DNA of 64,000 nt from Gekko japonicus (Eukaryota). The position numbers and the translations under genes were made by a program. Location of the stretch: positions 475,426-539,425 of the forward strand of contig NW_015177041.1 of the NCBI RefSeq assembly GCF_001447785.1. Direction: 5' to 3'. Shown here piece by piece: positions 1,488 to 30,320 of this stretch (its first letter is position 1; every line of letters starts with the position of its first letter). Under the pieces are notes generated by a model, which was not told where the DNA came from, did no database searches, and saw only the letters and a list, made by a program, of their open reading frames with translations.

Positions 1488-3873
1488 ATGAGAGGCATCA
1501 GCGTGACCACCCTCGTCCTCTTGTTCCTCGCAGGTGGGTCGGGGTGGCTGCCGCGGGAGGCGTCCTGCAGTGCAGCCTCAGGCCAGGGTGGGCCCTTGTG
1601 CCTTGGAGGGGGAGGGGGCAGCTCCGGACGCTGCAGGGGGGGTGGGGTAGCTCGGCCAAGGGAGTAGCATCGGCAGAGACGGGGGCTGTCTTGGGCCCCT
1701 CCCCACACGCTGAGCCCCAGGAGCGAGGGGCCCGCTCCGCCTTGCTCTGACGATGCCCCCCGCCTCTGCAGGAACCCAGGCCCGCCACTTCTGGCAGCAG
1801 GATGAGCCCCCCCAGTCCCCCGTGCAGCACCTCAAAGAACAGTTCCACGCCTACCTGGAATCCGCCAAGGCCAGTGCCAAGGAAGTGATTGCACAGCTGG
1901 ATGCCTCCAACTTTGGCCAGCGCTTTGAGTGAGTCAGTCGGTCGGTCGGTGGGGACTTTGGACAGGGGGCTGTGTCGCATAGTGTGTGTGTGTGTGTGCC
2001 TGGCAGCCTCTGGCACTCTGCTGCTGCTGCTGCTGGAGGGGGGGCTGTGCCCCGAGGAGGGTTGCGGGGAGGGGCGCGGGGGGGTACTGCCTCCCCAGGG
2101 GACGGCTTGCCTCCCTGTGGCTGTCTGGCTCCTCTCTCAGCTGCGCCCGCTGCCCTGTGAGACCAGCTTTGTGCCCGTGTGGCTGGCTCCGCGGCATGTC
2201 TCGTCCTTTGTTTTAGATACCACAGGCGTTTTCATCAGCCTCCCCTTTTTTCTCTACTCTCCCCCCCTTTCATACTGAATGTTGAGCCTGATAGGGAAAA
2301 TGTGGGGCAATCAAAAGGTTGCAGGCACTTTTGTGTCCTTTGAGTTGGTCCTGATAAGAAGTCCTGATAAGACCCGGGGTGGGGAAGAGATCAGTGGACA
2401 GAGTAAGGCCAGAGGTGCCCTGCTGGTCTGTTTAGTCCAGCACATCCTGTCTCATGCAGTGGCCGGCCAGTTGCCCTGGATGGCCAAGAAACGGCCTCGA
2501 GGCCGAGGTCTTCCCTTGATGCTGAGAAAGAAGGACTCTTCTCCCTTTCTCACCATACAAGACCTCACGGGCACTCCATGAAATTGCTGAGCGGCCGGCT
2601 TAGAACGGATAAAAGGAAGTCCTTCTTCACCCAAAGAGTAATGAACACGTGGAATTCATGGCCAAAGGAGGTGGCGGCAGCTACAAGCATGTACGGCTTC
2701 AAGTGGGAATTAGATAAACCTATGGAGCAGAGGTCCATCACTTGCCATTAGCCACGAGGTATAGATAGGAACACACTGTCTGGGGCAGCGATGCTCTGTC
2801 TTCTTGGTGCTTGGGGGGCAACAGTGGGAGGGCTTCTCGAATTCTGGCCCTGCTGGTGTACCTCCTGATGGCCCCTGGTATTTTTGGCCACTGTGTGACA
2901 CAGAGTGTTGGACTGGATGGGCCACTGGTCTGATCCAACATTGGCTTCTCTTGTGTTCTTATGCTCTTATGTATTTGCTAGAGATGGCCAGCTGGGGGAT
3001 CAGAAATTAAATAATTCAGTAGACACCCACTGGAGTAATAACTTGGTTTGTTTTCTTCAACTCACCTATACTGTGTTGAGTGTAGACTGTCTTCTCTCCT
3101 CCCCCCCCCCCCCCCGGGAAGGCTAACTGTTCCCCCCGGCAGTCATACCGCAGCGGCACCCGGCGGCGTCTGAAGGGGTTGGAGGGCCCCAGCTGCAGCA
3201 CTGGAGCCACCTGCACATCAATCACCTCTGCCTTCTCTCCCCCCTCCCTCCCTCCAGCCTGGACCTGGGGACCAAGGTGGAGATGGTGGCGGCAGTGGCT
3301 GAGCAGCTCCGTGAGCAGCTGGCCCCCAGCTACCAGGCCATGCGGGAGCGCATTCATTCAGACTACGAGGAGCTGACGGCGGACCTGGCCCCCATCAAAG
3401 CCAAGGTCATGCCCTTGTTCGACGACCTGAATGCAAACCTGCAGGAGGTGGGGCAGGCCTACTACGCGAAGGTGACGCCGCTGGTGGAGGAGTGGCGGGA
3501 GAGCGCGCGGCAGGACATGGACAGCCTGCGGAGCAAGATGGAGCCCATCTCAGCCCAGCTCCGGGACAAGGTGCGGGTGCTGGTGGCCGACTTCCGCCAG
3601 AAAGCGGCCCCCTTCATGGAGGAGGCGCGGCAGGCGATGAGGCAGAAGGCGCAGCAGCTCCAGGAGCGCGCCGTGCCCCGCGTGCAGGAGATCCGCACCA
3701 TCGTCCAGGAGCAGATCGCCAGCCTGCACGAGGCAGCGGCCCCGATAGTGGAGACCTTGCGCCACAAGATGGGGCCCTTGCTGAAGAACGTGGAGGAGCG
3801 CCTGGTGTCCCTGCTGGAGACCCTGCAGAGGAACCTGGACCAGGAGAGCACGCAGCAGCAGCAGCAGTCCTAG
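1488..3873 (+). CDS. APOA1: Apolipoprotein A-I (3 coding exons: 1488-1533, 1772-1928, 3258-3873; 272 aa; non-coding exon 1 ends at 1134)
   Basis: Signal peptide MRGISVTTLVLLFLAG, propeptide RHFWQQ then DEPPQSP, and 22-mer proline-punctuated amphipathic repeats. GT-AG introns in phases 1 and 2 with a 157-nt exon 3. The three LCAT-activating Arg are present (PISAQLRDKVRVLVADFR). AATAAA at 3957-3962. Confidence 0.96.
2420..2972 (+). mobile_element. CR1 3' end fragments in APOA1 intron 3
   Basis: Near match to 17490-17911 including the tail, preceded by an inverted older 3'UTR piece. Confidence 0.8.
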
Positions 3874-4671
3874 AGGGCGGCCCGCACGCGCTTGCCGCCG
3901 GACCTTCGGGCTGAGCACCTCGCCCGCCTCTCTCTGTCTCCCTCCAGCTGGTGCCCAATAAAAGCCGTGCGTGGGATGGCCCTGGTGTGCCGCGTGTCTG
4001 CTTCTGAGTGATGGGGGTGGGGGCCCCTGGGGGCAGACTCCTTTTCTTTCTGGAGCTGGGCTGGTGGGCACTCGGTCAAGCCCGGTGCCCTGTAGAACTC
4101 CCAGGGTGCATTGCTGTACTCTGGTGGCCCAGGAGGGGGAGACATATAGAACGTTAGTTCTGTAGTCCCCCCCGTCAGCTGCCATGAACTTTCTGTAGCA
4201 AAAATACATCAGGGATGCTCTAGGCCGGTCCTGAATCGAGCAGGAGGTTGGACTATATGGCCTGTAGGGCCCCTTCCCACTCTGTGTGCTTCTGGCCAGG
4301 TGTGTGGGGGGGTCCTCAGCTGGCTCCTGGAGCCAGGCAGGAGGGAGCTGGGGCTGCCTTTCCCGCCAAGGGCCCCCAGGCACTCCTTGTGGGCAGGGAG
4401 GGAACATTTCCCAGGTGGGGCTTTGGAAGCGGCTGCTTTCTCCCTCCCTCCCACCCCAGCCCAAGGGTGTAGACTTTCCAATTTCCGGGGGGGGGGGGCT
4501 GGGGCTGGGCCAGAGGCATTGCTTTGCTAGGAGCAAGGGTGGCTCCCGGGGGAGGCTGAGCACCTTCCTGAAAATTTCGGCGGGGGCTGCCGCCCCACCG
4601 CCCCCACGAAGATTACGCCTATGCCCTGGTTCCTGGGAAGTCAGTCCAAGAGAAGCTGTTGTTCCAAGGGC

Positions 4672-5575
4672 TTTATTGAAGTGGGGGTGGGGGTGGAGAA
4701 CACACAGGCCAGGCCAGGCAGCTGTGGGGCCAGAGCAGCCGGGCTCCTGCCTCACTCGGCCCTCCCTTGGCTCAGTTCACTTGTCCCAGGTACCTCGCAT
4801 CTGTTTTGGCACCCGGTTCAGGCTCTTCTTCATCAAGGCCCTGCCAAGAGGGGGGGGGCAGCTGTGGGGGGGGCCCTTCCCTGGCTCCACCCACACCACC
4901 CACAATTCCCCTCCCATGGCCTTTTGACACATGCAAGCCTGCCTCTGGGTGTCTGACCCATATGGGAGAGGCAGAAGGGGCTTCCCTGGTGGTGTTACCT
5001 GAATGACTCATTGATTGATGCCCTTGACCGACTGCAGCAATTAGTCCCCCAGTCTCCCTGCCTGAGCTCCTGCAAGGCGAAGAAGAAGACGAGGAGGAGA
5101 TTGGATTTATACCTCACCCTTCACTACCCAGAGGAGTCTCAGAGCGGCTTACAATCTCCTTTCCCTTCCCCCTCCCCAAAACAGACACCCCCTGCGAGGT
5201 AGGTGGGGCTGTGAGAGGTCTTTCAAGGACTGCTCCTGAGAGAACAGCTCTGAAAAAACTTGTGAGTGACCCAAGGTCACACCAGCAGCTGCAAGTGGAG
5301 GCGCGGGGGAATCAAACCTGGTTTTCCCAGATCAGAATCTGCACACTTAACCATTACACCAAACTGGCTCTCAAAGCGGAGTGGAGGGCTTGGGGCTACT
5401 GCTCCCCCCCTGCAGGCAGGCTTGTAAGCATCCCAGGTGAGGGAGCCCTAGGTGAGGGAGTCTCAGCTGGTGCACGGCGTGCGAACGACCTGGGTTCTCA
5501 CAGGCAGGCAGGGCAAGCAGCACCAGAAGGGGGCCATCCAGCGCAGGAGGGGCCCCCTCATTCTCTCAGCTGGAC
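4672..5575 (-). pseudogene. APOC3: APOC3 pseudogene (exon 2 5575-5502, exon 3 from 5069, exon 4 from 4840, polyA signal 4677-4672)
   Basis: Syntenic position and orientation, convergent with APOA1. Signal-peptide exon ends GCCT|GTGAG; exon 3 starts CAG|GAGCT; exon 4 is phase 2 (ALMKKSLNRVPKQMRGTWDK*); AATAAA on the - strand. The ancestral frame has a 1-nt frameshift and stops at 5502/5069-5068, 5043-5041 and 5010-5008. Confidence 0.72.
5079..5371 (-). mobile_element. Squam3-like SINE in APOC3 intron 2
   Basis: Same family; its tail abuts the exon 3 acceptor. Confidence 0.8.
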
Positions 5576-5811
5576 CTGGAGAGGAAGTCTGCAGGAGGCT
5601 CTTGTGGGCACCTTTCTGGGGGTGGGGAGAGCAGGGCGCCTCCCCAGGACCCATGCCCCCCCCCCCGTGGGCTAAAGCTGATCGTGATCCTTCTCAAGCT
5701 AATGGGCAAAATCAGCCTCTCTGTTCAGGGCCAGGCAGGGGTCATGTGGCTACCCAGGACAAGGTTACTCCTACCTCACATTTTATCTACGCAACAACAG
5801 TCCTGTAAGGT

Positions 5812-5915
5812 GCCCTGGCCTGGATAGCCCAGCCAAGCCTGATCGCAGAAGCTAAGCAGGGTTGACTCTGGCAAGTACTTGGATGGGAGACCTCCGTGGA
5901 ATACCAGCAGTTGGG
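5812..5915 (+). mobile_element. 5S rRNA-derived SINE head
   Basis: GAAGCTAAGCAGGGT...AGTACTTGGATGGGAGACC...GGAATACC matches the 5S internal control region but is diverged. Confidence 0.7.
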
Positions 5916-6965
5916 AGGTGGGGGCAGGCCTCATTCAGCCCCCATCCTCCTGAATATCCTCCAGGCCTCCAGTAGGAGTCAGTCATCAGAGGTCGCCATG
6001 ACTTCCAGGTGCGCACACACTCACACAAGCTTATATGAAAAATACCAAAAAGAAGGAAAAAAACAGTCTTGTAAGGTAGGTCAGGCAGAGTAGGTGTGAG
6101 TAGTCCAGGGAAATTGGGGGGGGGGGAGTTGAGCCTAGGTCTCCCAAAGCCTGTTCTGACACTAACCACTAGGCTACACTGTGAGGGAGGACCAAATCCA
6201 GGCCAGAATGCTGATGGGGGAAGGCAGAGGCTATGGAGGGGACTGTTCAGCCCACAAAGTAAATAATGGTGAGCTAAAGCTCAGAACTGCAGTACCCAAG
6301 GAAGTGAGCTGCGACTTACAAAAATCATATTGAAGGGGTCACTGGACTTTCGTTTTCTTCTTATTAAGCTGCTTGCTTCAAGTCCAGTAACACCTTAGAA
6401 ATCAGCATGATTTTTGGGATATGAGCTTCGGAGAGTCAAAGGGATCCGAGACATTCCCTGCAGAGAAACTCATTTTTCTTTGGAGGTTTGAACTGAGCAA
6501 AACCTTCATCTTTAGTTAAATATATATATATATATTTGGCAGAGAACAGGCAGGAGGAGGGAAGTCCATTCAATTGCTTTCCAGCCTCACCGCAGACCCA
6601 CTTTAGAAATGTTAGTAGGTTGAGGGAGGGACAGTGGGATGGTCAAGCGTCCCTTCCCCCCACCAGCTAGATAGGTGACACCTAGCAGGGAACAGAGATT
6701 TGGAGGACTGAAGGTGCTAGGAAGAGTTCAGGAGGAACTTCCTGGAGACTTCAAGGCCTGGTTAGTGGGAAGAGAAAGAGATGATAGAACTCCTGGGAGA
6801 GAGGAGGATGCTGATTCTTTGATTCCGTGGAAGCAGACCAAACTCTTACCTCTGTGGGAGGTGGCCATTGCCATGGGCTGGCCTGCTCACCTGAGCAGAA
6901 GCTTCAAGGAAATGGGAACTCTGTAGAGGAACTGAGACCTTTTAAGCCAAGGAGCCTGAGATTGG

Positions 6966-7400
6966 GACAGAGGTGTCAATCAAGTTTGTTACGAGGGCCA
7001 GTTCTGACATAAATGTCATTTTGTTGGGCCAGGCCATATGTGCCATAAATTGTAATGCCTGGTACCAGAGAGATAAACTTTACGAAGGACACAGGCAAAC
7101 CCAATTAACGATATTAAATTTTACTCATAATGCAAACATGCTTAAAACACTAGCACTCTTAACAGTATTTCCTTTATATCACAGTCTCGTGCTCTGAATT
7201 ATTGCATTGTAAGCTGAGAATGTAGTTTTGGTTTATTGATATTTATTACAGAAAAGAGCTGTTCACAGATGTGTGTGGTCCCAAACAGAATTTTAGAAGC
7301 AAAAGTCTTAATTTGGTAATTCATACCCCAAAACGGGTAAATTTTGCTAATGCCAACTTCAGAAAACTTATCCTTCGGTACAGCATCACACTGCTCCCCC
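6966..7400 (-). mobile_element. hAT (Charlie/SPIN-like) transposon fragment
   Basis: The - strand encodes FASKILFGTTHICEQLFSVININK, resembling the hAT C-terminal dimerisation domain. A CAGAGGTGTCAA-type terminus lies at about 6969. Confidence 0.6.
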
Positions 7401-8077
7401 ACCTACCTGCGATTTGTGGCATCCTTTCACTGGTAGGAGGGGAGCAGGGTGAAAGTCCTTATTTTGTCAACTGTACTGACTCACTGTCTGTAATCCACCT
7501 TGGGTACACCTCCCACCTTAAAGAAACTTTTCCTGTCTGTTCCCTGCCCCTCCTCCAGCACAAGCAACCCCAGGGGTCCTCTTCCCCCTCTGAAAAGACT
7601 CTTTCCAAAAAAACTACATTAGATCTGCAACTTTTTCCCTCTGGAAGCATTTTTGTGTGTGAAGCAGGGTTTCTCCTCTACTTAGAGAGGTCCCCCCCAG
7701 AACATACACAAATACTGTAAACTGTCCAAGGAACTGGAGCCACCGGCCTCAACACTTGCTCGGTCCACCACAAAAATCATGAACAGTCCTGACTGGGATG
7801 ACTGGGAAGATGGCTTCTGCCTGCTGGAAGCTCACCTGTAGAGCTCCCTGTTTTTATTTGTTTTAGTCAAGTATCCGGCCCTTTATCTTGAGTGACACTA
7901 GAGAACTCTTGAAAGTGCCTTCAGGCACCTTTTGTCGATGTTTGGCGATGAATTGATTTGAAGCCCTGCTCTCATTGTTAAGCCGGAGAACTAAGAGGAC
8001 AATTAGTCGAAACAGCTATGCTGGCGTCTGCCTGCAGACTTTCTACTCCTGGTCCTGTAAACAGCCTCAAAGCTGTG

Positions 8078-8351
8078 AAGAAGAAGTAGAAGATCCTGCC
8101 CCTTCACTACCCAAAGGAGTCTCAGAGCGGCTTACAAACTCCTTTCCTTTCCCCTCCCCACAACAGGCATCCTATGAGGTAGGCGGGGCTGAGAGAGCTC
8201 TTGACAGAAACGGCTCTTTTTCAAGAACAGCTCTGACAGAACTATGGCTTGCCCAAGGTCATCCAGCAGGTGTAGGTGGAGGAGTCGGAAATCAAACCCG
8301 GTTCTCCCAGATTAGAGCCCACTCACTTAACCACTACACCAATCTGGCTCT
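8078..8351 (-). mobile_element. Squam3-like SINE
   Basis: Family match. Confidence 0.8.
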
Positions 8352-8864
8352 CTTTTGCCTTGTTCTAGATAACAAGCTGTAAGTTATGAGTTCTAATAAG
8401 AACAGGAGGGGAAACGCACAATGTAACTGGCTGATCTACTTTCTATTCACCAAGTAGATACGAAGCCTTAGAGACCGAACAAGACTCATCTCCAGCCTTC
8501 ATTAAGTCATCCCTTCCAGGAGGACACTTACAACTCCCCAAAATTAATTGAAGAAAAGGAACCAGTCTAATTAGGCAACGCTGAGGAATACAAACTGGAT
8601 TTAGATTATTTAAAAGATTACTTACTGAAGTTTGTTGGAGATCATTGTTTACTGACTTCACAAACAGTTACTGAAATCTTTCAGCAACTGAATTGCATTT
8701 CTGCTCGACTTGAACAACTTAGATATAGCTTCAGAATTTGTATGCAGGAGACTCTAAATTCTGCCCCTTCAAAAGGTCTACTGGATAAGACACTAAATAA
8801 ATCTGACTAGAATGGAATCCCTTTATCCCAGAAGCTACAGTCTACTAAGCCCGCAGATGGTGAT

Positions 8865-9098
8865 GAAGAAGAAGAAAAAGAGTTACCCCGCCGTTGCCTC
8901 GGATTCTCAGAGCGGCTCACAATCTCCTTCCCTTCCTCTCCGCACAACAGACACCCTGTGAGGTAGGCAGGGCTGAAAGAGCTGTGATTGACACAAGGTC
9001 TCCCAGCTGGCTGCTTGTGGAGGAGGAGGAGTGGGGAATCAAACCCGGCTCTCCAGATTAGAGTTTGCTGCTGTTAACCACGACACCAAGCTGGCTCC
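8865..9098 (-). mobile_element. Squam3-like SINE (shorter subfamily)
   Basis: Family match. Confidence 0.7.
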
Positions 9099-9209
9099 CA
9101 GGGGGAACTTGGGTAAAATTTACTTGTGGAATGGCATGTCAACTGCAAAACAACCAGGTAGCAATCTGGGTCTCAGGAAATGACCTGAAATGAGGTCATT
9201 GGCAAAATA

Positions 9210-9626
9210 GGCATACATCCGAGAGTTCTGAAAGAACTCAAATGTGAACTTGTGGATCTCCTGACAAAGATATGTAATCTTTCCTTAAAATCTGCCTCCA
9301 TTCCTGAGGATTGGAAGGTAGCTAATGTCACTCCCATCTTTAAAAAGGGTTCCAGAGGAGATCCGGGAAATTACAGGCCAGTCAGTCTGACGTCGATCCC
9401 GGGTAAATTGGTGGAAACCATTATTAAGGAAAGAATTAGTAGGCACATAGATGAACAAAACCTATTGAGGCAGACTCAGCACGGTTTCTGTAAGGGAAGA
9501 TCTTGTCTCACTAACCTGTTAGTGTTCTTTGAGGGGGTGAACAAACATGTGGACAAGGGGGATCCAATAGATATTATTTACCTTGACTTCCAGAAAGCTT
9601 TTGATAAAGTTCCTCATCAAAGGCTC
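9210..9626 (+). mobile_element. CR1 LINE reverse-transcriptase fragment
   Basis: IPEDWKVANVTPIFKKG...NYRPVSLTS...YLDFQKAFDKVPH. Confidence 0.9.
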
Positions 9627-9691
9627 CCCATTGGCCAGATTTTGAGAAGAAAGCCTCACGTTGTTGACCTTGTTAAAGTTGGAAAGCTTGA

Positions 9692-9970
9692 GAGCCAGTT
9701 TGGTGTCGTGGTAAAGTGTGTGGACTCTAATCTGGGAGAACCGGGTTTGATTCCCCACCCCTCCACTTGCACCTGGCTGGATGACCTTGGGCAAGCCGTA
9801 GTTCTGACAAGAGCTGTTCTTGAAAAAGAGCAGTTTCTCTCTAGAGCTCTCTCAGCCCCACCCACCTCACAGGGTGTCTGTTGTGGGGAGGGGAAGGGAA
9901 AGGAGTTTGTAAGCCGCTCTGAGACTCCAAGTGAAGGGCCGGGTATAAATCCAATGCTCCTCCTCCTCCT
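9692..9970 (+). mobile_element. Squam3-like SINE
   Basis: Family match. Confidence 0.8.
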
Positions 9971-11177
9971 TGGGACCTTGCGATCAGGGGTGAATCTGCT
10001 TCTCACTTTTCCCCAACCATTCCATGGATGTTGTTACAAATGTGCAGATTCCTTTCACTGTTTGAAATTACAGTCACTAGAGTCTTCCTTGATGAGGCTG
10101 TCTACCCACTATTACGAAACACTAGTGAGACAGAACACCTACTGGCTGGCTGTGGCTTTGGAACAGCTACTTTTAGCAGAGTTCTCGCCAAATCGTTAAG
10201 ATCCTCAAGATTATCTCACAGGTCATTTTACAAACCCCCCAGAAAGGATTGGCAAAATAAAAATCTTTTCCCTACCACATCAAGTGGAGAGATCAGCCAG
10301 AAGGGTGCTCAGTGGTGAGAGAAGGACGAGAAACAAGAAGGTCACCAATGAGAAACACTTTCTCAAACATAGAGAACCAACAAATTACTGATGAAACTAG
10401 TCAAAATCAACAATCAGATTCAGATCTCCGTAAGGCAGAATTTACATGGACTGCTCTTCTTCGTAAGATAAAGTCTGACTTACTCTCTTGTATGTTATCA
10501 GAAGGAGAAATGTCTTCTGGTGATAATGAGCTGGGCATATAGTCATCAAAACCCCGAAAGTGAATAGCTTAGATGTCTGCTGATTATTTCCAACTGACTT
10601 CTGCCTCCCAGTGAGCTGATATGATAATATAGCTACGTCAAAGGAGCTGAAGCTGCCAGTCCTCAGGAGACAACCCTGATTAATTTCTAAAGTTTCCTGA
10701 AGATTTCCTTTATTTGCTAATTTCCCCCCTCTTCTAATTCCTAAAGATTCTCATTTTGGCCTAGGTAGAATTGCCTACCAAAGCTATACATCAGGCCAAG
10801 TCTGCCCCTTACATTATTTTGATGTTTCCTTGTGATTTTGATGGCATACCTGTTTTATCTTAGCCTCCAGCTACACCCCTGCTCTTGCATTCCACCCCCC
10901 TCAAACACCAACACTCACCACCCTCCCTTGCCCCAACAGCTGTATTTCTGCTTCCCTCCCCGGACTTTCCCAGTGTAGTTCCCACCACACACCTCCACCT
11001 CACTGCATGCACTTCAACCCTTCCCTTCCGTGCCCCTCCCTCCAATCCCTTATACCCCACCCCCCTGATGCAGTTTGCCATTCCTACACTTCCCTTAATG
11101 CGCTGCTGAAGCAAAGGGGGAGGCCCAGCACACATGCGCATTGATGGGGAAGCAGCAACCCCCCTGCCTCTGACAGT

Positions 11178-11476
11178 AGGAGGAGGAGAAGAGGAAGAAG
11201 ATGAGGAGACTGGATTCATACCCCATGGCCCTTCACTACCCAAAGGTGTCTCAGAGCGGCTTACAAACTCCTCTCCCTTCCCCCGCCACAACAGACACCC
11301 TGTGAGGTAGGTGGGGCTGAGAGAGCTCTGATGGAAACTGCTCTTTTTCAAGGACAGCTCTTATCAGAACTACGGCTTGCCCAAGGTCATCTAGCCAGGT
11401 GCAAGTGGAGGAGTGGGGAATCAAACCCAGTTCTCCCAGATTAGAGTCCGCGCACTTAACCACTACGTCAAACTGG
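11178..11476 (-). mobile_element. Squam3-like SINE
   Basis: Family match. Confidence 0.8.
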
Positions 11477-12329
11477 CGGCCCCACATGCACAGCCTGGCC
11501 CAACCGAGAGAGAGACAGACAGACACGGATGGACCCTCCAGCCAACCCACCTTTCCGCTGCTCTTGCCGCCACCCCCCTCCTCTTCCTTGCTCAATTATC
11601 AGGCCAGTTTCGGCCCCCCGGGCTGTATGTCTGAACCCCTGCACAGAGGGAAGGAGGGAGGAATTGTGTTTTCCCCCCCCCCTTTTGTTTGAACCCTTGC
11701 TTAATCTGTTGATGTGCTGAGTGTATGCATGTGGACATTTTATTTTCAATAAATGTGTTATAACTTTTAAACTAATAGTGGTTCTCTGTACCACCTTAGA
11801 CCCCCATTGTTCTGGGCCCCCTATTTTAAAAAGGAGCACGGGGGGGGTGGAGTCAGTTGGGGAGCCGTGACACCCTCACTCAGAGGCACACGAGGCTGCA
11901 AGCTGTCCCCGTGGTAGCCAGAGGTTGGATAGCAGGAGACACGGGGGCCTCAAACAGGGCGAGGAGGCCGGGAGCCCTGCTGGCCCTCTCTGTGGGCAGT
12001 TCCTACGGAGGCCAGGTGATGGCAGCAGTTGAGCGCAGAGAGAGAAAAGCTGCTCCAGGTGTTGGGGAAATTAGGTGGGCGGCAGGTGCCAGGTGAAGAC
12101 CTCGGGCAGCCACTGGGACCCAGACCTGGGAGGATCTCCACGTCAGAGCAGAACGGTTCCGCCACAGACCCCATAGATCTTGTGCGTCCCTCCCCTCCGG
12201 GGCTCCTGGACGTATATCAGGCTGTTTGACTGCACACCAACATGTTTGCCCTCTCAAATTAATCAAAAGCCTCTTGCTTCAGAGGTGTATGAGATCCCTC
12301 TTTCTATATTATTTGTTAGAAAAATAAAG

Positions 12330-13140
12330 GACATTGGGCATGACGAATGCCTTCTTTAACTGGCTGCCCTGCTGGATTCTGTACATCTGGTTATGGTGAC
12401 GCATGCTCCTGTAACTGCGCCGCTAGAGTACTGCCACACACTCTGCATGGGACTGCCCTTGAAGCATGACTCGGAAGTTGGTGGAGAATACAGCTGCTCG
12501 TCGGCTTGTCAGCACCCGTTACTGCCCCTGGGAAACAGCAACGTGGGGGTCATTTTTCTTCCGAGTCATGTTTGAGCTGCTGCTATTAATCTCTCAGGCT
12601 CCGTGCAACACGAGAGACTGGCTTTCCCAGGATGAACCTGAGCACCACTGTGACCCTCCCAGGATCTTCTTCAAGTGATGCTCCCTGGTGAGGGGAAGGT
12701 CTGGCCCAGTCTGTCAGAATACCGGTGGAATGAGCTCCCGGAGGAGATCAGGGCCCTGCGGGACCTCTTACAGTTCTGCAGGGCCTGCAAGAAGGAGCTC
12801 TTCCACCAGGCTTTCATTTAGGAGCCGCCACCTCCACTAGTTACCATCACTAGTAACAACTGTAGAGTCTGGTTCCTGGTGAATGATCGACAGCCTGTGC
12901 GCTCCGAGTAAGATCAATGATGGAAATGAACACCATGTGGTAGGCACTCACGCAGCAATGCCATTGTTATGATATTGGAATAACATCGCTAGCACTTTAA
13001 TATTTAATACTGTATTGTTTTAATGGCTTTGGTGATTTGATTTTTTTAATCTGTATTTTATTTTGCGTAAGCCGCCCTGAGCCTGCTCTGGTGAGGTAGG
13101 GCGGGATATAAATTAGAATATAAATAAATAAATAAACAAG
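12330..13140 (+). mobile_element. Degenerate L2-like LINE 3' region
   Basis: RT C-terminal remnants (LEYCHTLCMGLPLK; WNELPEEIR) and a 3' end GTAAGCCGCCCTGAG...(TAAA)n. Confidence 0.6.
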
Positions 13141-13689
13141 AAGGAAGGAGCAGCACCCGGGCCAGTGCAGTTCCTCAGACAGTGCGAGGCTGTCTTCTGT
13201 CGGTGGGCCTTGGGGGGCACTGAGATGGGGGGGAGAGGGTACCGCTGGGGGTGGGGGCGTCATAACATTGTCATAACAGTTGCTCTGCTTTTGATCTGAA
13301 GGGTCTGGGTTCAATTTTGCTGTTTGCTTGACTGGAGTTATGAGTCGCCACAGAAAGGCAGGGCCGAGCGTTTCAGTAAATCGCACATTGGTGCAGATGC
13401 CTTCCTTTGGCTAGGCCTAATGGTATGAAGAGTGGGGGGGCACACTGGCCAGGAACAGCAAGAGAGGAGGGAGATTTCCCCCCCACCCCCAGCCTGGAGG
13501 CCTATAATGAATACAATGAATGAAATTATTGTTAAGGTGAGTTCTGCTTGCTCGAAATACACCGCGTTCCGTTTTTTGATACAAAAATCAGAGAATTTGG
13601 GGGTAATCACTGAAAATCCTCCTCCATAATATTTGTCTTTTGAAATAATTGGGATGCTTTTTTAAGGGCAGGGTTTATTCATACAAAAC

Positions 13690-15483
13690 ATGCTGGCCTG
13701 GATGAATCACAAGCGGGAATTAAGATTGCTGGGGAAAAGATAAACAACCTCAGATATGCAGACGATACCACTCTAATGGCAGAAAGTGAAGAGGACCTAA
13801 AGAGCCTCTTGCTCAGAGTAAAAGAGGAGAGCGCAAAAGTGGGCTTGAAGCTCAACATCAACAAAACTAAGATCATGGCATCCGGCCCCATCACTCCTTG
13901 GCAAATATAAGGGGAAGTCGTGGAAGTAGTGACAGACTTCACGTTCCTGGGATCCCAGATCACCAAAGACTGTGACAGCAGCCATGAAATTAAAAGACTC
14001 CTGCTCCTTGGGAGGAAAGCAATGGCGAACCTCAAAGAAGACGGGGACGGCAAAGGATGAGATGGTTAGACAGTGTCAAAGTAGGGCTGGGCCCTGTTCC
14101 AAGTGGCCCTGCTCGGCATGTTCAGCACAACCGGTCAGAAAGAAGGAAAGTGAAAGGCAAAGGCGAAAAGGAAAGATTTACCCAACTGAATGCAGATTTC
14201 CAGAGAACAGCAAGGAAGGATAAGGAGGCCTTCCTGAATGAACAATGCAAAGTAATAGAAGAAAACAATAGAATGGGAACGACTAGAGATCTCTTCAAGA
14301 AAATTGGAGAAATCAAGGGAACGTTCCATGCAAAGCTGGCCATGATAAAGGACAAAAACGGTAGGGACCTAACAGAAGCAGAAGAGATTAGGAAAAGATG
14401 GCAAGAATACACAGAAGAACTATACAAGAAAGACCTCGATGTCCTTGACAACCACGACGGTATAATCACTGACCTCGAGCCAGACATCCTGGAATGTGAA
14501 GTTAAATGGGCCTTAGAAAGCATTACTAACAACAAAGCTAGTGGAGGTGATGGTATTCCAGCTGAACTATTCAAAGTCTTAGAAGATGATGCTGTTAAAG
14601 TGCTGCACTCCATTTGCCAGCAAATTTGGAAAACGCAACAGTGGCCACAGGATTGGAAAAGATCAGTATACATTCCAATCCCAAAGAAGGGCAATGCCAA
14701 GGAATGTTCAAACTATCGCACAATTGCACTCATATCACACGCTAGCAAGGTCATGCTCAAGATCCTACAAGCTAGGCTTCAACAGTACGTGGATAGAGAA
14801 CTACCAGAAGTACAAGCTGGGTTTCGAAGAGGTAGAGGAACGAGAGATCATATTGCCAACATTCGCTGGATTATGGAAAAAGCAAGAGAGTACCAGAAAA
14901 ATATCTACTTCTGCTTCATTGACTATGCTAAAGCCTTTGACTGTGTGGATCACAACAAACTATGGCAGGTCCTTAAAGAGATGGGAGTACCAGACCACCT
15001 CACATGTCTCTTGAGAAACCTGTATAAGGGTCAAGAAGCAACAGTTAGAACCGGATATGGAACAACTGATTGGTTCAGCATAGGAAAAGGAGTACGACAA
15101 GGATGTATACTGTCACCTTGCTTATTTAATATATATGCAGAGTACATCATGCGAAATGCTGGCCTGGATGAATCACAAGCGGGAATTAAGATTGCTGGGG
15201 AAAAGATCAACAACCTCAGATATGCAGATGATACCACTCTAATGGCTGAAAGTGAAAAGGATCTAAAGAGCCTCTTGCTCAGAGTAAAAGAGGAGAGCGC
15301 AAAAGTGGGCTTGAAGCTCAACATCAAAAAAACTAAGATCATGGCATCCGGCCCCATCACTCCTTGGCAAATAGAAGGGGAAGTCGTGGAAGTAGTGACA
15401 GACTTCACGTTCCTGGGATCCCAGATCACCGCAGACTGTGACTGCAGCCATGAAATTAAAAGACGCCTGCTCCTTGGGAGGAA
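13690..15483 (+). mobile_element. BovB (RTE) LINE composite: fragment 13690-14077 plus RT-coding fragment ~14126-15483
   Basis: FIDYAKAFDCVDHNKLW, GVRQGCILSP and NLRYADDTTLMAESE; open ORF 14057-15544. Confidence 0.95.
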
Positions 15484-16505
15484 CTGTCCGATATTTTTTC
15501 CTTTAAAAAGGGATACAAAACACAATCAGTCTCAAATTCCCTGATCCCTCCCCCTGCAGGAGAAGAATCCAGGAGGGGCCAGCGAGCGCCCCTTTTCTTC
15601 CGAAGATGCTCCCAGCTCCCTCCCTGCCCGTTAAATGCTTTTTGAAGCTGGGATGCCTGAAAGGGTCTTGCATGGAGGGCACTTGGCTGAAGCCTCTCGT
15701 GTCAGTTTGGGGGGACGTGGGACGTGTGGCAGGGGCTCTATTGCTGCTGTGTGAATGTTGGCCTCCTCCTGTCACGTGACTCACTTGCTGGAGCCCACTG
15801 GAGTCTTCAGTTCTGTCGCTCCCTCCCCTCTGTGGGTGAGTCCACTGGGTGAAGAGAGCCGGTGAATGGGCAGTCCTGGCTTACAGCGCGGGGGGGGGGA
15901 GGGGGCTGGGCTCCCATCCAGGCACCCCCCACCCCCCCACACACATTGCAGGAGCCAGGGGTGTCCCGAGAAAAGGCAGTGCCACATCTAAGGCAGGGTA
16001 CAGGATCCTCTGTAGCTGCCTGAAGGAGCAAAGTGGCCCTGCCCACCCCCCCGGCAGTCACCTCCTCTGGATTCTGCCCCGCAAATCCCCCTTGCCTTGG
16101 ACTGTGGTCCCAAGATAACACACGGAGCAGCTGCAGCGGCCTCCTGGCCGGTTCCTAAGCCCAGGGGAGCGTGGGGGATCCAGTCCAGCTCGCCTGCCAG
16201 CCCAGCCCTCTGGGGACTTGCAGGTGGGGAGCGGAGGAGCCACCGGTACCTGCTCAGAGGCCTGTGCCACACATCCCAGGGTGTGCCGCCTGTGAGATGA
16301 GCACGGCCGTTCTGCAGAGGCCATCGTGAGCACCGCCTCCCCTCCTCAGTGGGCACCGTCCTCGGTCTGTTGGGGGCAGGGATGGCTTTGCCACACCCAG
16401 AAGAGCGATGGACCTGGGTGACGTGATGTGCGGGGTGATTCTGCTGACGGCTGGGGAGGCACTTTGGCTGCTGCCGTCACCTGGCCGGCCAGCACAGGGG
16501 AGGGA

Positions 16506-16518
16506 GGGCCAAAGGTCG
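16506..16518 (+). promoter_or_regulatory. DR1/HNF4-like element (candidate APOC3/APOA4 intergenic enhancer)
   Basis: GGGCCA-A-AGGTCG in a GC-rich, repeat-poor island (15.5-16.6 kb). Confidence 0.4.
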
Positions 16519-16642
16519 CGCTGCTCAAAGGCTGCGTTTATCCTTCTCCTGTTGCTGGTGCCACTTGGCCGAGAGCAGAAAAGCAGTCCGAAAGGTGCTA
16601 ATGTCAGCGTTCAGAACTGACTGATGGCAAAGGACAATTATG

Positions 16643-16921
16643 AGCCAGTTGGGAGTGGTGGTTAAGCGCACGGACTCTAATCTGGGAGAACCGGGTTTGA
16701 TTCGCCCACTCCTCCACTCGCAGCTGCTGGATGACCTTGGGCAAGCCATAGTTCTGACAAGAGCTGTCCTTGGAAAAGAGCAGTTTCTGTCAGAGCTCTC
16801 TCAGCCCCGCCTTACCTCACAGGGTGTCTGTTGTGGGGAGGGGAAGGGAAAGGAGTTTGTAAGCCGCTCTGCGACACCTTTGGGTAGTGAAGGGCGGGGT
16901 ACAATTCCAATCTCTTCTTCT
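16643..16921 (+). mobile_element. Squam3-like SINE
   Basis: Family match. Confidence 0.8.
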
Positions 16922-17285
16922 ATGTCTCAAATCTCCCTGCTTGTTACAATGCGCAAGTACGTTCGAGTTGAGGGACTTTGCAGAACACAAATCCCACAAT
17001 CAACGTGAGTTGATCGGTGCATATGGCACATGGGGGAAAAGACATGGCTGTGGTATCTGCTTATGTCAAGTCGTGTTTGCAGAGTTGTGGGGAGTGGACA
17101 TTTCACCACGATGTGGACTCCCTGAGAACAAGCAGCCCCCTCCGCCTCCTTCCCCAGAGGGTGGGATGCCAGGCGGATCACGTGTGGGGAGGAGGCCATC
17201 AAGGACAGCTGCTGGTTTCAGACCCGGCCAGGCCTCCCCCGAAAGCTCCCCCCATTAACATCCCGTACCTTCCAGGGAACTTTCT

Positions 17286-17911
17286 GGTCACCACGCCTTA
17301 AAAAGGATATTATAGCTTTGGAAAAAGTGCAGAAAAGGGCAACTCGAATGATAAAAGGGTTGGAACACTTTCCCTATGAGGAAAGGTTAAAGCGCTTAGG
17401 GCTCTTTAGCTTGGAGAAACGACGACTGAGGGGTGACATGATCGAGGTTTATAAGACTATGCATGGGAAAGAGCAGGTAGAGAAAGAGGTACTTTTCTCC
17501 CTTTCTCACAATAAAAGAAGTCGTGGGCACTCCATGAAATTGCTGAGCGGTCGGGTTAGAACGGATAAAAGGAAGTACTTCTTCACCCAAAGAGTGATTA
17601 ACACTTGGAATTCACTGCCACAGGAAGTGGTGGCGGCTACAAGCATGGACGGCTTCAAAAGGGAATTAGATAAGCATATGGAGCCATCAGTGGCTATTAG
17701 CCACGAGGTATAGATAGGGGCTCTGGGGCAAGTGATGCTCTGTCATCTTGGTGTTTGGGGGGGGGGGCAACAGTGGGAGGGCTTCTAATGTCCTGGCCCC
17801 ACTGGTGGACCTCCTGATGGCACTGGTATTTCTGGCCACTGTGTGACACAGAGTGTTGGACTGGATGGGCCTTTGGCCTGATCCAACATTGGCTTCTCTT
17901 ATGTTCTTATG
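17286..17911 (+). mobile_element. CR1 LINE 3' end
   Basis: EKVQKRATRMIKGLE...[18 protein letters not shown], then the 3'UTR and a (TTCTTATG)n tail. Confidence 0.9.
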
Positions 17912-18299
17912 AGCGACAGGACGTGATTAGTCCTGCCAAGGAAGGTGTCGGGGCTCAACGCAGCCAGAGAGGGCACGCTCCACCTCCCAACCTCCTGCAC
18001 GTTCCACTGTCAGCCCCACAGTTGTGTGTGTGAAAAACCCTTCTGGAAGAACAGCCGAAGTAACACAAGACGGTGTGCAACCTACTTTGGAGTTCTTGTC
18101 AGGGTGGATGTGGGAACACACTGCCTGGTGGTGGTGGTGGGGACCATCTTGGACTCTGTTCTGAAGGGCTCTCCCCTGCCTCCCTTCGCCCGTCCCACCC
18201 CCACCAGCCCCTAAAAGTGGTGTTTGACAGGTGGTGGGAGCCCCCCCCAGCCGTTGTTCCCCTCCTCCTCCAGCAGATAAGTCCTCACCCTGGTCAGCA

Positions 18300-19011: not shown

Positions 19012-22000
19012 ATGGAACTGAAGGCAGCTGCCTTGATCGTCAGCCTCTTGGCCATTGCAGGTGAGTTCCTTTGGGGATCCAAGCACAGAGCTCGGGGGTT
19101 CAGTCCTCCTCTTCTGCTCCCTGACTCAGAGCAGGGGATAGAACTAGGGGGATACTTCTAAATGCATGCATAACTGAACGCGTGTCCTTGAAGGTCTGGC
19201 AGTGGACCAAAGCATTTATTCCCCAATACTGTCAAGTGCCGAGGTGCCGTTTCCGGCTTCATTTGCCGGCAGAGAGCAGAATGAGAGTGAAGAAGCTTCT
19301 GCCGAATTGCCACGTAGCTCTGATCAAGTGATTTATGAAGGTCTAAGTTGTGAGAGCCGGGGTCCGAACTCTCTCCCAGGTCCCGTTTAGCAAAGCTCTC
19401 GTGAGCAGCAAGTGGGCTAAAGTTGTCTTGAGAAACTCACCCACGAGGTTAGCTATTAGCGGGGCTTTTTTTTCTGGGGGAATGCGCCAGAACGGAGTTC
19501 CAGAAACTCTCTGACAAATTCTTTTAACAATGTTTATGAGTTCATGAGTTGTCAGTGTACAGCCTGAATACTTCATTTCCCTCTTGAGAATTCCGGCCCC
19601 TCTTTTTTATATATATAAAAAGAGCCCTGGCTCTTAGGAGCAGGTTTTGCTTGACTCAGCTGACCCAACCGTTGGACCGGGCATTGTTTAAGAAGCCTCA
19701 AAGAGGTGGCCAGAAGGTGGGCTTCAGCTGGGGAGGTGGGAGGGAGATGAGGCCAGGTGTGTGTGTGTCTCCTGCCTACCCCGGCGCCCGGGCGCTGCTG
19801 GGCCCAGCCTGTCCTTTGTGACCCCCGGTGGCCCATCTTCTGGGAGGCCTCGGGTGCACGTCGCCCTGCCGGCCTGGCTGAGGGGGTGCCGCGGTCATCG
19901 GGAGGGGGGGCTGTGGAGATCAGACCACAAAGAGACTCACGGGAGACGTCTCTCAGGAGAGGCAGCGCAGTCACCCGTCCGGGAGCGGAGTTCTTCTGCT
20001 GGGGTGGGGGGTTTGGGCTGCACACTGGACTCCCTTCCCTCGTCGTCCCTCCAGGGGCCCAGGCGGATGTCAGTGCCGACCAGGTGGCGGATGTGGTGTG
20101 GAACTACTTCACTCAACTGGGCAGCAACGCCCAGGAGAAGGTGGATCAGCTCCAGCAGTCGGAGATCAGCCAACAGCTCCAGTGAGTACCTGCTCTTGGG
20201 GCCCGCACAGCGGGGGGGGGGGTTCCGACTCCTGTCTGGCTACAAAGAGGGGCAGGGGACACTGCACTGCTCAGAGCCCCCCCCCCCCCCCCCCCCCCCC
20301 CANNNNNNNNNNNNNNNNNNNNNNNNNNNNNNNNNNNNNNNNNNNNNNNNNNNNNNNNNNNNNNNNNNNNNNNNNNNNNNNNNNNNNNNNNNNNNNNNNN
20401 NNNNNNNNNNNNNNNNNNNNNNNNNNNNNNNNNNNNNNNNNNNNNNNNNNNNNNNNNNNNNNNNNNNNNNNNNNNNNNNNNNNNNNNNNNNNNNNNNNNN
20501 NNNNNNNNNNNNNNNNNNNNNNNNNNNNNNNNNNNNNNNNNNNNNNNNNNNNNNNNNNNNNNNNNNNNNNNNNNNNNNNNNNNNNNNNNNNNNNNTCACC
20601 CATGCCCCCCCCCCCCCCGGAGGTTGCAACCTCCCACTTACCGATAACCGGCCATACTTAGTTACCTCAATGGGCCGGATTCTCCCTACGGCAAGCATGA
20701 CTATTGATTTTATATGTTTTAATGTGTTTTAAATTTTATTGTATTTATCAAAATGTTGTGACCCGCCCTGAGCCCATTTACGGGGTGGGCAGGATATAAA
20801 TGCAATAAATAAATAAATGATTCAAGGTGGGAGAAGTTGTTATGGGCCTGAGTCCTCTTCCTTAGGTGCCCAAAGGGTCACACGTAGCTTGCCACTGGAG
20901 TATGTATGCACATGTTTGCATAAGGGCATGAGGAGAAGGTGTGTGTGTGTGCATGAACCTGTGTCGAGGGTTAGTTGTTTCCTGTCATGAAATCTCCTCT
21001 CCTGGTCCCTCTGGAGCTCAAGTGGTGCTGCTGAGAAAGCTGGGAGCTGCAGCTCATGTGCACCTTTCTTGGTTGATTCAAATGTGTATACCCCGTCTTT
21101 CCCTGTGTCTCCTACAAAATACCTCCCCCCCCCCAAAGATGTGTGTGGCCTAAACCCCATTTGCAGCCACAGCCAACAGACGGGCCTTGTAGCACCTCCT
21201 AGAGCTTTCGAGTGGTGGCCCCACAGGATCCGGTGGCTTCATCCCGGCTTCTTTCGGGAGGCCTGCTGCCCATGGCATTGAGCCTCCCCTCCAAGCTCCA
21301 GTCAAAGTTCAGAAATGGCCCCCCGGACACTCCTGACCACCGCCCCCCCAAAAAAAACACAGGGGAGGAAAGAGATGCACTTTATTGGGGTTTGGCTCAG
21401 GCTGAAAGTCCACTGCCGTGATATGGGCTACGTCTGCTGTGAAGGAATGGACTTGCAAAGCCCCCCCCCCCCCTTTCTTTGGGTTGGGACCCAGGAGGAA
21501 GTCAGAAGAACCCCACAGCTGTCCCAGGTCCCTGTTTGGCACTGCCGCCATCCCTTACTCCACGGAGGTGCCAAGAACCAACTGGGTAACCCCCACAGCC
21601 ACCAGTGACCCTGGGAGTATCTCCTGCTCCTCGGAACGGTACCTCTTGCACTTTGTACCTGTGTTGCTGCTACGAGTCCCCACTCAGCTGTTGCACCTCC
21701 TGCTTTGTGGCTACAAGCCCACACTGGGGCAGTCTATTGCAACGCAGTCCTCCCAGTGTTGAGATATTGCGCTCCAGGGACGGGGAGCTTAACCCCTGCC
21801 CCTCCCCGTGAATCCCACTTCAGACAGCAAGACTGAATAAGTGTGGTGTGCTGACAGAGATCAGATTTAGAGCATTCAAAATACAATAATAAATGAATGA
21901 AAAGAATATCGTGCAGGCTAAACAAGGGTAGAGCGGATGGGGGTGGCTCCCGCCCCTCCTCCAGCACAGCAGTCTTTCCCATTGGGACCCATCCAAGCCA

Positions 22001-23585
22001 CTTCCACGACTAGTAGTCCCGAGTCTCTGGGTGTTGGGAGAGAAGGAACGACCCACCTTCCGCCAGCGGGTGAAGACTTTTTGCCTTTAGTCTGGCGTTC
22101 CCTCAATGAGCCCTCCTTCCCGCCTTATGTTGTAATTGCCGTCTCCGTGTCTGTATCTTAGTGTTGGCTTTATGGTGTGTTTGGTATATTTATAATGATA
22201 ATTATTTGTTTTGGCAGCCACCTTTGGGTGGCCCTGATGGGGCAGAATGGTGGGATGCAACTGTTTTTTTAAATATATAAAGTTTTATTAGTTTATATAT
22301 AGAAAGGGGGGAAGGGAAAAGAAGGGAAAAGAATTTTTGTTGTTCAGAATACAGAGTTATATATAAAAGCCAATTTGACATTCTGCATGTGAATCTTCTC
22401 ATAAAAGTTTCACAACTATTATATCCATCTTTCTTAATGTTCTTCATTTAGTCTTAGTTTCTCAGTACTTATGCTTTAACCAGTCATAGAACACCCTCCA
22501 TGGTCCCGTAAATTCTTCTTCCATTTTTCCTTTTAGTATATTTGTCAATCTGTCCATTTCAGCACATTCCATAACCTTCGTTATCAATGCATCGAGCTTG
22601 CTGCAACCGTTGTTGCCCAAATCCCTGACTTCTCCCTGCTCCCCCTTTTGATTGCAGGACCCTCTTCCAGGACAACGTCCAGACAGTCAGCATGTACACC
22701 GGGGACCTGAAGAAGCAGCTGATTCCCTTCGCCACAGAGCTGCACGCGCGGCTGACGGAGGAATCCCGGAAGCTGAAGGAGCAGATCCAACAGGAGATGG
22801 AGCAGCTCCAAGCCCGGATGTCCCCCTTTGCCGATGACGTCCACCAGCAGATCAGCAAGAACATCCAGGAGCTGCAGACCAAGCTGGCCCCTTATGCGGA
22901 GGAGCTGGGTGTGCAGGTGGAGAAGAGCACCGCAGACCTGCGCCAGCAGATGGTCCTCCTGAGGCAGAATGTGCAGGCCAAGCTCGAAGAGAACATTGGC
23001 AGCCTCCAGAGCTCCCTCACCCCGTACGCCGACGAGCTGCAGCAGCAGATCAACCAGAAGGTGGAGGACACCAAGAGGCAACTGGCCCCCTATGCCGACG
23101 AGATCAAGGCCAAGGTGGACGAGAGTGTGGAAGAGCTGCGCAAGAGCTTGAGCCCCTACGCCCAGGAGATGCAAGAGCAGCTGACCCGCCAGCTGGAGGG
23201 GCTCTCCTTCCAGATGAAGAAGAGTGTCGAGGACCTGCGCTCCCAGCTCTCGGAACAAACTGAGCAGCTGCGCCTGAAGCTCAGCCCGTATGCCCAGGAG
23301 CTGCAGCAGAAGCTGGAGGAGGGCGGGGCGGACCTGCGGGAGTCCCTGGCCCTCTACGCCCAAGGCCTGGACGGCAAGGTCGGCCAGCAGGTGGAAGAGT
23401 TCCGCCAGGCCGTGATGCTCCAAGGGCAGAACTTGAACAGGCAGCTGGTGCAGAAAATGGAGGAGATGCGGCAGAAGCTGGAGCCGCACACTGACACTGT
23501 GGGAGACCACCTCGTCTTCCTGGAGAAGGATGTGAGGGACAGGTTCAGCTCCTTCTTCGACAGCCTGAGGCAGCTCGGAAACTAA
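19012..23585 (+). CDS. APOA4: Apolipoprotein A-IV (coding exons 19012-19060, 20055-20181, 22658-23585; 367 aa; non-coding exon 1 ends at 18453)
   Basis: [39 protein letters not shown] and TLFQDN...[20 protein letters not shown], with many PYA 22-mer repeats. Coding exon sizes of 49 and 127 nt match APOA4. AATAAA at 23836-23841. Confidence 0.97.
20303..20595. other. Assembly gap (APOA4 intron 3)
   Basis: N run. Confidence 1.
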
Positions 23586-30318: not shown

Positions 30319-30320
30319 AG

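What the first reader, a model, noticed from the sequence alone, without database searches (positions are those of the whole stretch)
4672..5575. Hidden APOC3 remnant with multiple inactivating lesions
The ORF track misses it, but exon architecture is clear on the - strand at the APOC3 position. Exon 2 gives MRGPLLRWMAP and then, after a 1-nt shift at the G5 run 5529-5533, LLVLLALPA. Exon 3 gives AQAGRLGD*LLQSVKGINQ* and, shifted, NTTREAPSA (human KTAKDALSS). Exon 4 gives ALMKKSLNRVPKQMRGTWDK*, followed by AATAAA. Several independent lesions argue against a single homopolymer error. This would be a natural knockout of the lipoprotein-lipase inhibitor.
Basis: partly seen in the sequence, partly recalled or inferred. 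Interest (0 to 1): 0.85.

Follow-up and report, generated by a model that had tools for sequence, protein, structure and literature searches.

The report
Probable decayed APOC3 gene in gecko
In the Japanese gecko, the slot where the lipase-inhibitor gene APOC3 normally sits holds a small three-exon gene skeleton that looks like a broken APOC3, but neither its APOC3 ancestry nor its loss of function could be proven with the tools that worked here.

Summary
The window is Gekko japonicus: its APOA1 last exon is 100% identical to NCBI's G. japonicus apoA-I. Gene order is APOA1(+), candidate(-), APOA4(+), ZPR1(+), so the candidate at 4672-5575 sits in the APOC3 slot, tail-to-tail with APOA1.

- the exon translations and the G5 run;
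- a TGA at the exon 2/3 split codon, the position of human R19X;
- a TAA and a TGA in exon 3;
- AATAAA after exon 4.

Exon 2 is the only signal-peptide-like exon in 128 kb of sequence (both strands). Its hydrophobic core is out of frame with its ATG.

Two things are not established. First, no frame of any exon shows detectable similarity to Apo-CIII, by Pfam, by PDB search, or by phmmer against 1.84 billion proteins. Second, the lesions depend on the frame chosen. Two of the three frames of exon 3 are open, and a 64-codon path through canonical splice sites is uninterrupted.

Best reading, about 0.58: an old APOC3 unitary pseudogene. It is a new member of a known kind and of moderate interest. 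The scan had already noted the split-codon stop (s1-831025) and the missing APOA5 (s1-830880) on this same DNA.

The parts
5502..5575 (-). Putative exon 2 (signal-peptide exon). ATG at 5561-5559 in an A-at-minus-3 context. The ATG frame reads 20 codons to the donor (phase 0). The hydrophobic core LLVLLALPA (5529-5503) lies in another frame and ends in phase 1 with T5502.
   Evidence: the only signal-exon-like element in the window
5529..5533 (-). C5 run (G5 on the + strand) between the ATG-frame part and the hydrophobic core.
5070..5501 (-). Intron 2 (GTGAGA ... TTGCAG), 432 nt.
5080..5376 (-). Old tRNA-type SINE filling most of intron 2. Its (CTT)n tail ends about 10 nt before exon 3 and supplies the pyrimidine tract of the acceptor.
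   Evidence: at least 10 further copies in the window at 74-84% identity; 3' ends aligned
4999..5069 (-). Exon 3, short form, 71 nt, bounded by CAG| and |GTAACA. Frames a and b are open. Frame c, the family phase, has T5502|GA5069-5068 = TGA, TAA at 5043-5041 and TGA at 5010-5008.
4939..4998 (-). Possible remainder of an ancestral-length exon 3 (5069-4939 = 131 nt, against 124 nt in human). It contains NTTREAPSA (4996-4970, frame b), ends ...CAG and is followed by GC, not GT.
   Evidence: the human exon length is from established knowledge (coding positions c.56-c.179)
4672..4840 (-). Exon 4: acceptor TTGGCAG|, G4840 completes the split AG|G codon, then 20 codons, TGA at 4779-4777, about 100 nt of 3' UTR and AATAAA at 4677-4672.
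1488..3962 (+). APOA1 (context): exons 1488-1544, 1768-1929 and 3259-3873, AATAAA at 3957. It converges on the candidate; the two poly(A) signals are about 0.7 kb apart.
   Evidence: (100% identity to G. japonicus apoA-I over the last exon)
19900..23585 (+). APOA4 (context): N-terminal exon near 20.0-20.2 kb and an intact last exon at 22692-23585.
   Evidence: PF01442, E = 2e-63

Best explanation
This is the orthologous remnant of APOC3 in Gekko japonicus, a unitary pseudogene that still shows the gene's skeleton. The ancestral gene ran on the minus strand from about 5575 to 4672. It had a signal-peptide exon ending one base into a codon, a middle exon, and a last exon whose first base completes an AG|G codon, followed by AATAAA.

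In that ancestral reading no apoC-III can be made:
- The ATG is out of frame with the hydrophobic core.
- The split codon at the exon 2/3 junction is TGA, the same position and the same change as the human null allele R19X.
- Two more stops follow in exon 3.
- Exon 3 has a length (71 or 131 nt) that cannot keep both intron phases.
- Exon 4 is about half the expected coding length and lacks the aromatic-rich lipid-binding helix.
- An old SINE sits 10 nt from the exon 3 acceptor.

Shown here: position, strand, neighbours, splice and poly(A) signals, stops and frames. Inferred: APOC3 ancestry (from synteny and architecture only), loss of function, and the physiological consequence that lipoprotein lipase and hepatic remnant uptake are freed from apoC-III inhibition.
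For: Synteny: APOA1(+) is 100% identical to G. japonicus apoA-I. APOA4(+) matches PF01442 at 2e-63 and ZPR1(+) matches PF03367 at 8.7e-18. The candidate lies on the opposite strand, 0.7 kb from the APOA1 poly(A) signal, as in human.

Architecture and stops.

Exon 2 is unique in the window as a signal-exon-like element, and its hydrophobic run is not in the ATG frame.

No intact Apo-CIII-like exon exists anywhere between APOA1 and APOA4 on either strand.

No annotated protein of 41-131 aa shares three 5-residue words with the 75-aa piece that holds the exon 4 peptide, although the database holds G. japonicus RefSeq proteins.

SINE next to the acceptor.

ApoC-III is reported as widespread and stable in amniotes (PMC6854765), so a gene or its remains is expected here.

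Human intron phases follow from the standard variant names c.55C>T (R19X), c.55+1G>A and c.179+1G>T. That numbering is established knowledge; the variants themselves are listed in PMC4304213.
Against: No statistically detectable similarity to Apo-CIII in any frame.

By hand, frames a, b and c of exon 3 each give a comparably weak alignment to human apoC-III, so the frame path and the lesion count are not anchored.

All GT/AG splice sites of the short-exon model are intact and good, and an uninterrupted 64-codon path exists through them.

Only one genome and one window were seen: no reads, no RNA, no other gecko.
Confidence: 0.58

Rival explanations
1. The locus is APOC3-derived but not dead. 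It is still transcribed and spliced through its intact GT/AG sites. It either encodes a strongly diverged 64-residue product (ATG-frame exon 2, exon 3 frame a, exon 4) or acts as a non-coding RNA.
For: All splice signals of the short-exon model are canonical and strong, and AATAAA is kept. The 64-codon path has no stop (read exon by exon).
Against: Open frames of 20-23 codons in 60% GC DNA are expected by chance; two of the three frames of exon 3 are open.

The product would have a poor signal peptide (…FWCCLPCLP, proline at -1) and five cysteines. It would lack an apoC-III-like amphipathic aromatic helix.

No protein in the databases shares words with the piece that holds its exon 4 peptide, and there is no family hit.
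Confidence: 0.14
2. The pattern has no APOC3 ancestry. APOC3 was deleted outright or lies elsewhere, and these exon-like pieces belong to an unrelated transcript or to none.
For: No sequence similarity to Apo-CIII at any threshold tried. The pyrimidine tract of the 'exon 3 acceptor' comes from a SINE tail. The peptide resemblances to human are at noise level in all frames.
Against: Exact syntenic slot and strand. A unique signal-exon-like element, against 0.4 expected in the whole window. The hydrophobic core ends in phase 1, and an A-x-A motif spans the junction as in human. The last exon starts with the G of an AG|G codon. AATAAA lies 100 nt after the stop.
Confidence: 0.2
3. An intact APOC3 is hidden by assembly errors in a GC-rich, gap-containing scaffold.
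For: The window has three N gaps and many long G/C homopolymers near the exons. One lesion sits at a C5 run.
Against: Correcting the C5 run still leaves TGA at the split codon, then TAA and TGA, in the same frame. Substitution errors creating three stops are implausible. Exon 3 and exon 4 lengths are also wrong.
Confidence: 0.05

Closest known systems
Human APOC3 (apolipoprotein C-III, 11q23.3, APOA1/C3/A4/A5 cluster)
   Same: Position between APOA1 and APOA4, on the strand opposite to both and converging on APOA1. Small gene with a signal-peptide exon ending in phase 1 and a last exon entered in phase 2 through an AG|G codon. AATAAA lies shortly after the stop.
   Different: No detectable protein similarity. 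Exon 3 is 71 or 131 nt instead of 124. Exon 4 codes for 21 instead of 39 residues. The canonical frame is closed by stops and has no in-frame ATG.
Human APOC3 null alleles R19X, IVS2+1G>A and IVS3+1G>T
   Same: The gecko's split codon T|GA is the same codon position, and the same C-to-T type change, as R19X (c.55C>T). Human carriers have low triglycerides and low apoC-III (PMC4304213).
   Different: In man these are rare heterozygous variants in an otherwise intact gene. Here the stop would be fixed in the reference genome and accompanied by further decay.
Lineage-specific losses in the exchangeable apolipoprotein family (ApoE, ApoC-I and ApoC-II in birds; ApoA-V in platypus; the human APOC1 pseudogene)
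   Same: Loss or pseudogenisation of one family member in one lineage while its neighbours stay intact (PMC6854765).
   Different: That survey of 30 species found ApoC-III stable once it had appeared. A squamate loss of ApoC-III was not found in the searchable literature.

Membership tests
APOC3 orthologue (by position) | Lies between APOA1 and APOA4, transcribed opposite to both, 3' end facing the 3' end of APOA1 | tested here: met
   APOA1(+) 1488-3873, poly(A) signal at 3957. Candidate(-) 5575-4672. APOA4(+) 19.9-23.6 kb. ZPR1(+) at 31.5 kb.
APOC3 orthologue (by gene structure) | Coding exons split at phase 1 (after c.55) and phase 2 (after c.179); middle exon 124 nt | tested here: inconclusive
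   The hydrophobic-core frame ends in phase 1, and exon 4 is entered by AG|G. But exon 3 is 71 or 131 nt, so length minus 4 leaves a remainder of 1 and both phases cannot hold at once.
Apo-CIII protein family (Pfam PF05778) | Significant sequence match to the family profile or to a solved apoC-III | tested here: not met
   No hit at E <= 10 for the exon pieces. No hit at E <= 1 for any stop-free piece of at least 38 aa between APOA1 and APOA4. No PDB apoC-III hit at E <= 10 from any frame. Pieces are short, so sensitivity is low.
Functional apoC-III | Open reading frame from an ATG through a cleavable signal peptide | tested here: not met
   The ATG frame and the hydrophobic-core frame differ. 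The A-x-A cleavage motif spans the junction, but its middle codon is TGA.
Functional apoC-III | C-terminal amphipathic, aromatic-rich lipid-binding helix encoded by exon 4 (39 codons in human) | tested here: not met
   Exon 4 reads 20 codons with one W, a central P and then TGA. The human comparison is from established knowledge, not from a tool.
Functional apoC-III | Abundant liver and intestine transcript | not testable with these tools
Unitary pseudogene | Inactivating lesions shared by related species, or confirmed in reads, and no functional copy elsewhere | not testable with these tools
Only this window of the genome could be seen.

The most novel reading that the evidence does not exclude
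Gekko japonicus, and perhaps geckos more widely, has lost both triglyceride regulators of the APOA1/C3/A4/A5 cluster: the lipase inhibitor apoC-III as a decayed pseudogene, and the lipase facilitator apoA-V with no trace between APOA4 and ZPR1. That would be a natural double knockout of an antagonistic pair, in a family member so far described as stable across amniotes.
Probability: 0.3. Interest if true: 0.6.

Novelty: new member of a known kind. Interest (0 to 1): 0.4.

Why it matters
ApoC-III is a validated drug target. People who lack one copy have low triglycerides and less vascular disease. A vertebrate lineage that lives without it, possibly also without apoA-V, would be a natural experiment on how triglyceride clearance is controlled. 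That is especially relevant in animals that store fat in the tail and feed intermittently. It would also correct the published view that ApoC-III is stable across amniotes. As it stands, the case is one reference assembly and a synteny argument, so its value is as a cheap, well-defined target for a cross-gecko comparison.

Tried and rejected

I did not resend a trimmed stretch, so read laying could not be used.

Sequence searches that gave nothing:
- Pfam on the exon pieces at E <= 10.
- Pfam on all 234 stop-free pieces between APOA1 and APOA4: no Apo-CIII, only reverse transcriptase and noise.
- PDB phmmer with the frame a, b and c pieces and exon 4 alone at E <= 10: no apoC-III, only chance hits.
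- Word-based protein search with the frame c piece: no candidate.
- Exhaustive phmmer with the frame b piece: one hit, a translated tandem repeat (P0006), irrelevant.
- Protein atlas on the exon 3 and exon 4 parts: no usable hit.

Literature searches for APOC3 loss in reptiles or any species found nothing. The supplements of two papers are not held.

Recent duplication of the APOA1 or APOA4 exons was rejected: blastn of the locus against the window finds only SINE copies and one 55-nt repeat.

Full report
**What the window is.** The + strand ORF at 3277-3870 carries an Apolipoprotein A1/A4/E domain. It finds NCBI's Gekko japonicus apolipoprotein A-I at 99% identity. G. kuhli (80%), Heteronotia (63%) and Euleptes (56%) follow. 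A tblastn of these proteins places the APOA1 exons at 1488-1544, 1768-1929 and 3259-3870, and the last exon is 100% identical to G. japonicus. A second apolipoprotein gene on the + strand has an APOA4-type N-terminal exon near 20.0-20.2 kb. Its last exon at 22692-23585 is intact (PF01442, E = 2e-63). A ZPR1 zinc-ribbon exon follows at about 31.5 kb on the + strand (PF03367, E = 8.7e-18). The order APOA1, candidate on the opposite strand, APOA4, ZPR1 is the amniote APOA1/C3/A4/A5-ZPR1 order. The candidate therefore lies exactly where APOC3 should lie. Its AATAAA (4677-4672, minus strand) faces the APOA1 AATAAA (3957, plus strand) across about 0.7 kb.

**The observation.**
- Exon 2 starts after CTTCCTCTCCAG at 5575 and has its ATG at 5561. 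In the ATG frame it reads MRGPLLRWMAPFWCCLPCLP up to the donor GTGAGA at 5501.
- Downstream of the C5 run (G5 on the + strand, 5529-5533), a different frame reads LLVLLALPA plus one extra base, T5502.
- Exon 3 starts after TTCGCCTTGCAG at 5069. Frame c reads AQAGRLGD, TAA (5043-5041), LLQSVKGINQ, TGA (5010-5008).
- NTTREAPSA lies in frame b at 4996-4970.
- Exon 4 starts after CTCTTGGCAG at 4840. It reads G + ALMKKSLNRVPKQMRGTWDK, then TGA (4779-4777), with AATAAA 100 nt later.

**Is it more than chance?** I scanned both strands of the window for signal-exon-like elements. The criteria were a pyrimidine-rich AG acceptor within 45 nt upstream of an ATG, a GTRAG donor 36-90 nt after it, and a run of at least seven A/L/V/I/F/M residues in any frame between them. 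The only hits were the two ATGs of this exon. Locally shuffled sequence gave a mean of 0.4 hits per window. I set the criteria after seeing the exon, and they miss the APOA1 signal exon because its donor is GTGGG. The number is therefore only a rough guide. Even so, an element of this kind on the right strand within 2 kb of the APOA1 3' end is unlikely to be chance. The script also shows that the hydrophobic run is not in the ATG frame.

**What fits APOC3.** The standard human variant names c.55C>T (R19X), c.55+1G>A and c.179+1G>T give the human coding exon boundaries. That numbering is established knowledge; the variants are listed in PMC4304213. The human signal exon ends one base into codon 19, which is C|GA. 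The middle exon is 124 nt. The last exon is entered through codon 60, which is AG|G.

In the gecko:
- the hydrophobic-core frame also ends one base into a codon;
- the junction codon is T|GA, followed by GCT as in man, which gives A-stop-A where man has the A-R-A cleavage motif;
- both candidate ends of exon 3 (4999 and 4939) are ...AG, followed by the G that opens exon 4.

So the split-codon stop noted elsewhere by the scan (s1-831025) is real, and it is the counterpart of human R19X. ApoC-III is reported as present throughout amniotes and stable once it appeared (PMC6854765). A gene or its remains is therefore expected in this slot.

**What does not fit, or is not anchored.** No frame of any exon gives a detectable match to Apo-CIII:
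- Pfam at E <= 10 on the exon pieces;
- PDB phmmer at E <= 10 with the frame a, b and c pieces and exon 4 alone;
- phmmer of the frame b piece against 1.84 billion representatives, which returned only a translated tandem repeat;
- a word-based search with the frame c piece;
- the protein atlas.

The pieces are 8-40 residues long, so these negatives are weak. They do mean that APOC3 ancestry rests on synteny and architecture alone.

By hand, I could align each of the three frames of exon 3 to some part of human apoC-III at about the same low score. Frame c gives LLQSVKG against LLSFMQG. Frame b gives LIAAVGQGH...NTTREAPSA against LLSFMQGY...KTAKDALSS, with no stop at all. Frame a gives ASINESF against SSVQESQ.

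Frames a and b of exon 3 are open. There is a good internal donor, CAG|GTAACA, at 4998. Taking the ATG frame of exon 2 (20 codons, phase 0), frame a of exon 3 (23 codons plus AG) and exon 4 (G plus 20 codons) gives an uninterrupted 64-codon path through canonical splice sites. I read this exon by exon.

Open stretches of this length are expected by chance at 60% GC. The product would also have a poor signal peptide, five cysteines and no aromatic amphipathic helix. I therefore do not think it is a working apoC-III, but I cannot exclude that it is made.

**Other signs of decay.**
- Exon 3 is 71 nt, or 131 nt if it once ran to 4939, where GC now stands in place of GT. Neither length is compatible with phase 1 at its start and phase 2 at its end.
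- Exon 4 codes for 21 residues where human has 39. Read past the TGA it continues TEPR..., so WDK*TEPR faintly recalls human WDLDPEVR. This may mark a premature stop, or it may be noise.
- A roughly 300-nt SINE fills 5376 to about 5080 of intron 2. At least ten other copies lie in the window at 74-84% identity.
- The SINE's (CTT)n tail ends about 10 nt before exon 3 and provides the acceptor's pyrimidine tract. An insertion that close to an acceptor is unusual in a constrained gene.
- CpG observed/expected is 0.21 across the candidate, like the flanks, against 0.47 in APOA1.

**Is there an intact APOC3 nearby?** All 234 stop-free pieces of at least 38 residues on both strands between APOA1 and APOA4 (3874-19700) were scanned against Pfam at E <= 1. 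No Apo-CIII hit appeared, only reverse transcriptase and noise. The rest of the genome could not be searched.

**What could not be done.** I did not resend a trimmed stretch, so there are no reads and no RNA.

**Verdict.**
- The most likely reading (about 0.58) is an old APOC3 unitary pseudogene. It keeps its exon skeleton, is closed in the canonical frame by a frameshift in the signal peptide, an R19X-like split-codon stop and further stops, and has mis-sized exons 3 and 4.
- Rival, about 0.14: an APOC3-derived locus that is still transcribed or translated.
- Rival, about 0.20: a pattern with no APOC3 ancestry.
- Rival, about 0.05: an assembly artefact.

A lineage-specific pseudogene is a known kind of thing, and the literature I could search reports no ApoC-III loss in any amniote. 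Together with the missing APOA5 noted by the scan, it is a worthwhile and cheap target for a cross-gecko comparison. It is not yet a demonstrated natural knockout.

Noticed in passing
window 23586-31113: No Apolipoprotein-domain match in any stop-free piece of at least 40 aa on either strand between the end of APOA4 and the N gap before ZPR1, and no long + strand ORF there. APOA5 is not detectable at its syntenic place. This agrees with the scan's note s1-830880. A 361-nt N gap (31114-31474) is too small to hide its last exon.
   Followed up: partly
window 5080-5376 and copies at 1-272, 8100-8352, 9688-9968, 11184-11477, 16642-16920, 28976-29254, 51296-51579, 55800-56086, 63832-63968: An abundant tRNA-type SINE of about 300 nt with a (CTT)n tail. 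Copies are 74-84% identical to the intron 2 copy, so it is an old family. One copy ends 10 nt before the candidate's exon 3.
   Followed up: partly
window 9189-10196 and 13994-15541 (+): Two LINE reverse-transcriptase ORFs (RVT_1, E down to 3e-40) occupy much of the 16-kb APOA1-APOA4 interval, which is far larger than the gene remnant itself.
   Followed up: no
window 5700-5712 (-): The motif TGATTTTGCCCA lies about 130 nt upstream of exon 2. It resembles the HNF4 site TGACCTTTGCCCA of the human APOC3 promoter (recalled from memory) but is one base short, so the half-site spacing is lost. This may be chance.
   Followed up: no
window 5652-5664 (-), 4851-4858 (-), 4530-4541 (-): Long G or C homopolymers (8-13 nt) flank the candidate exons. 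Assembly errors would be most likely at such places, and they should be checked in reads.
   Followed up: no
window 20303-20595: A 293-nt N gap lies inside APOA4, in the intron after its N-terminal coding exon. It was left as it is.
   Followed up: no
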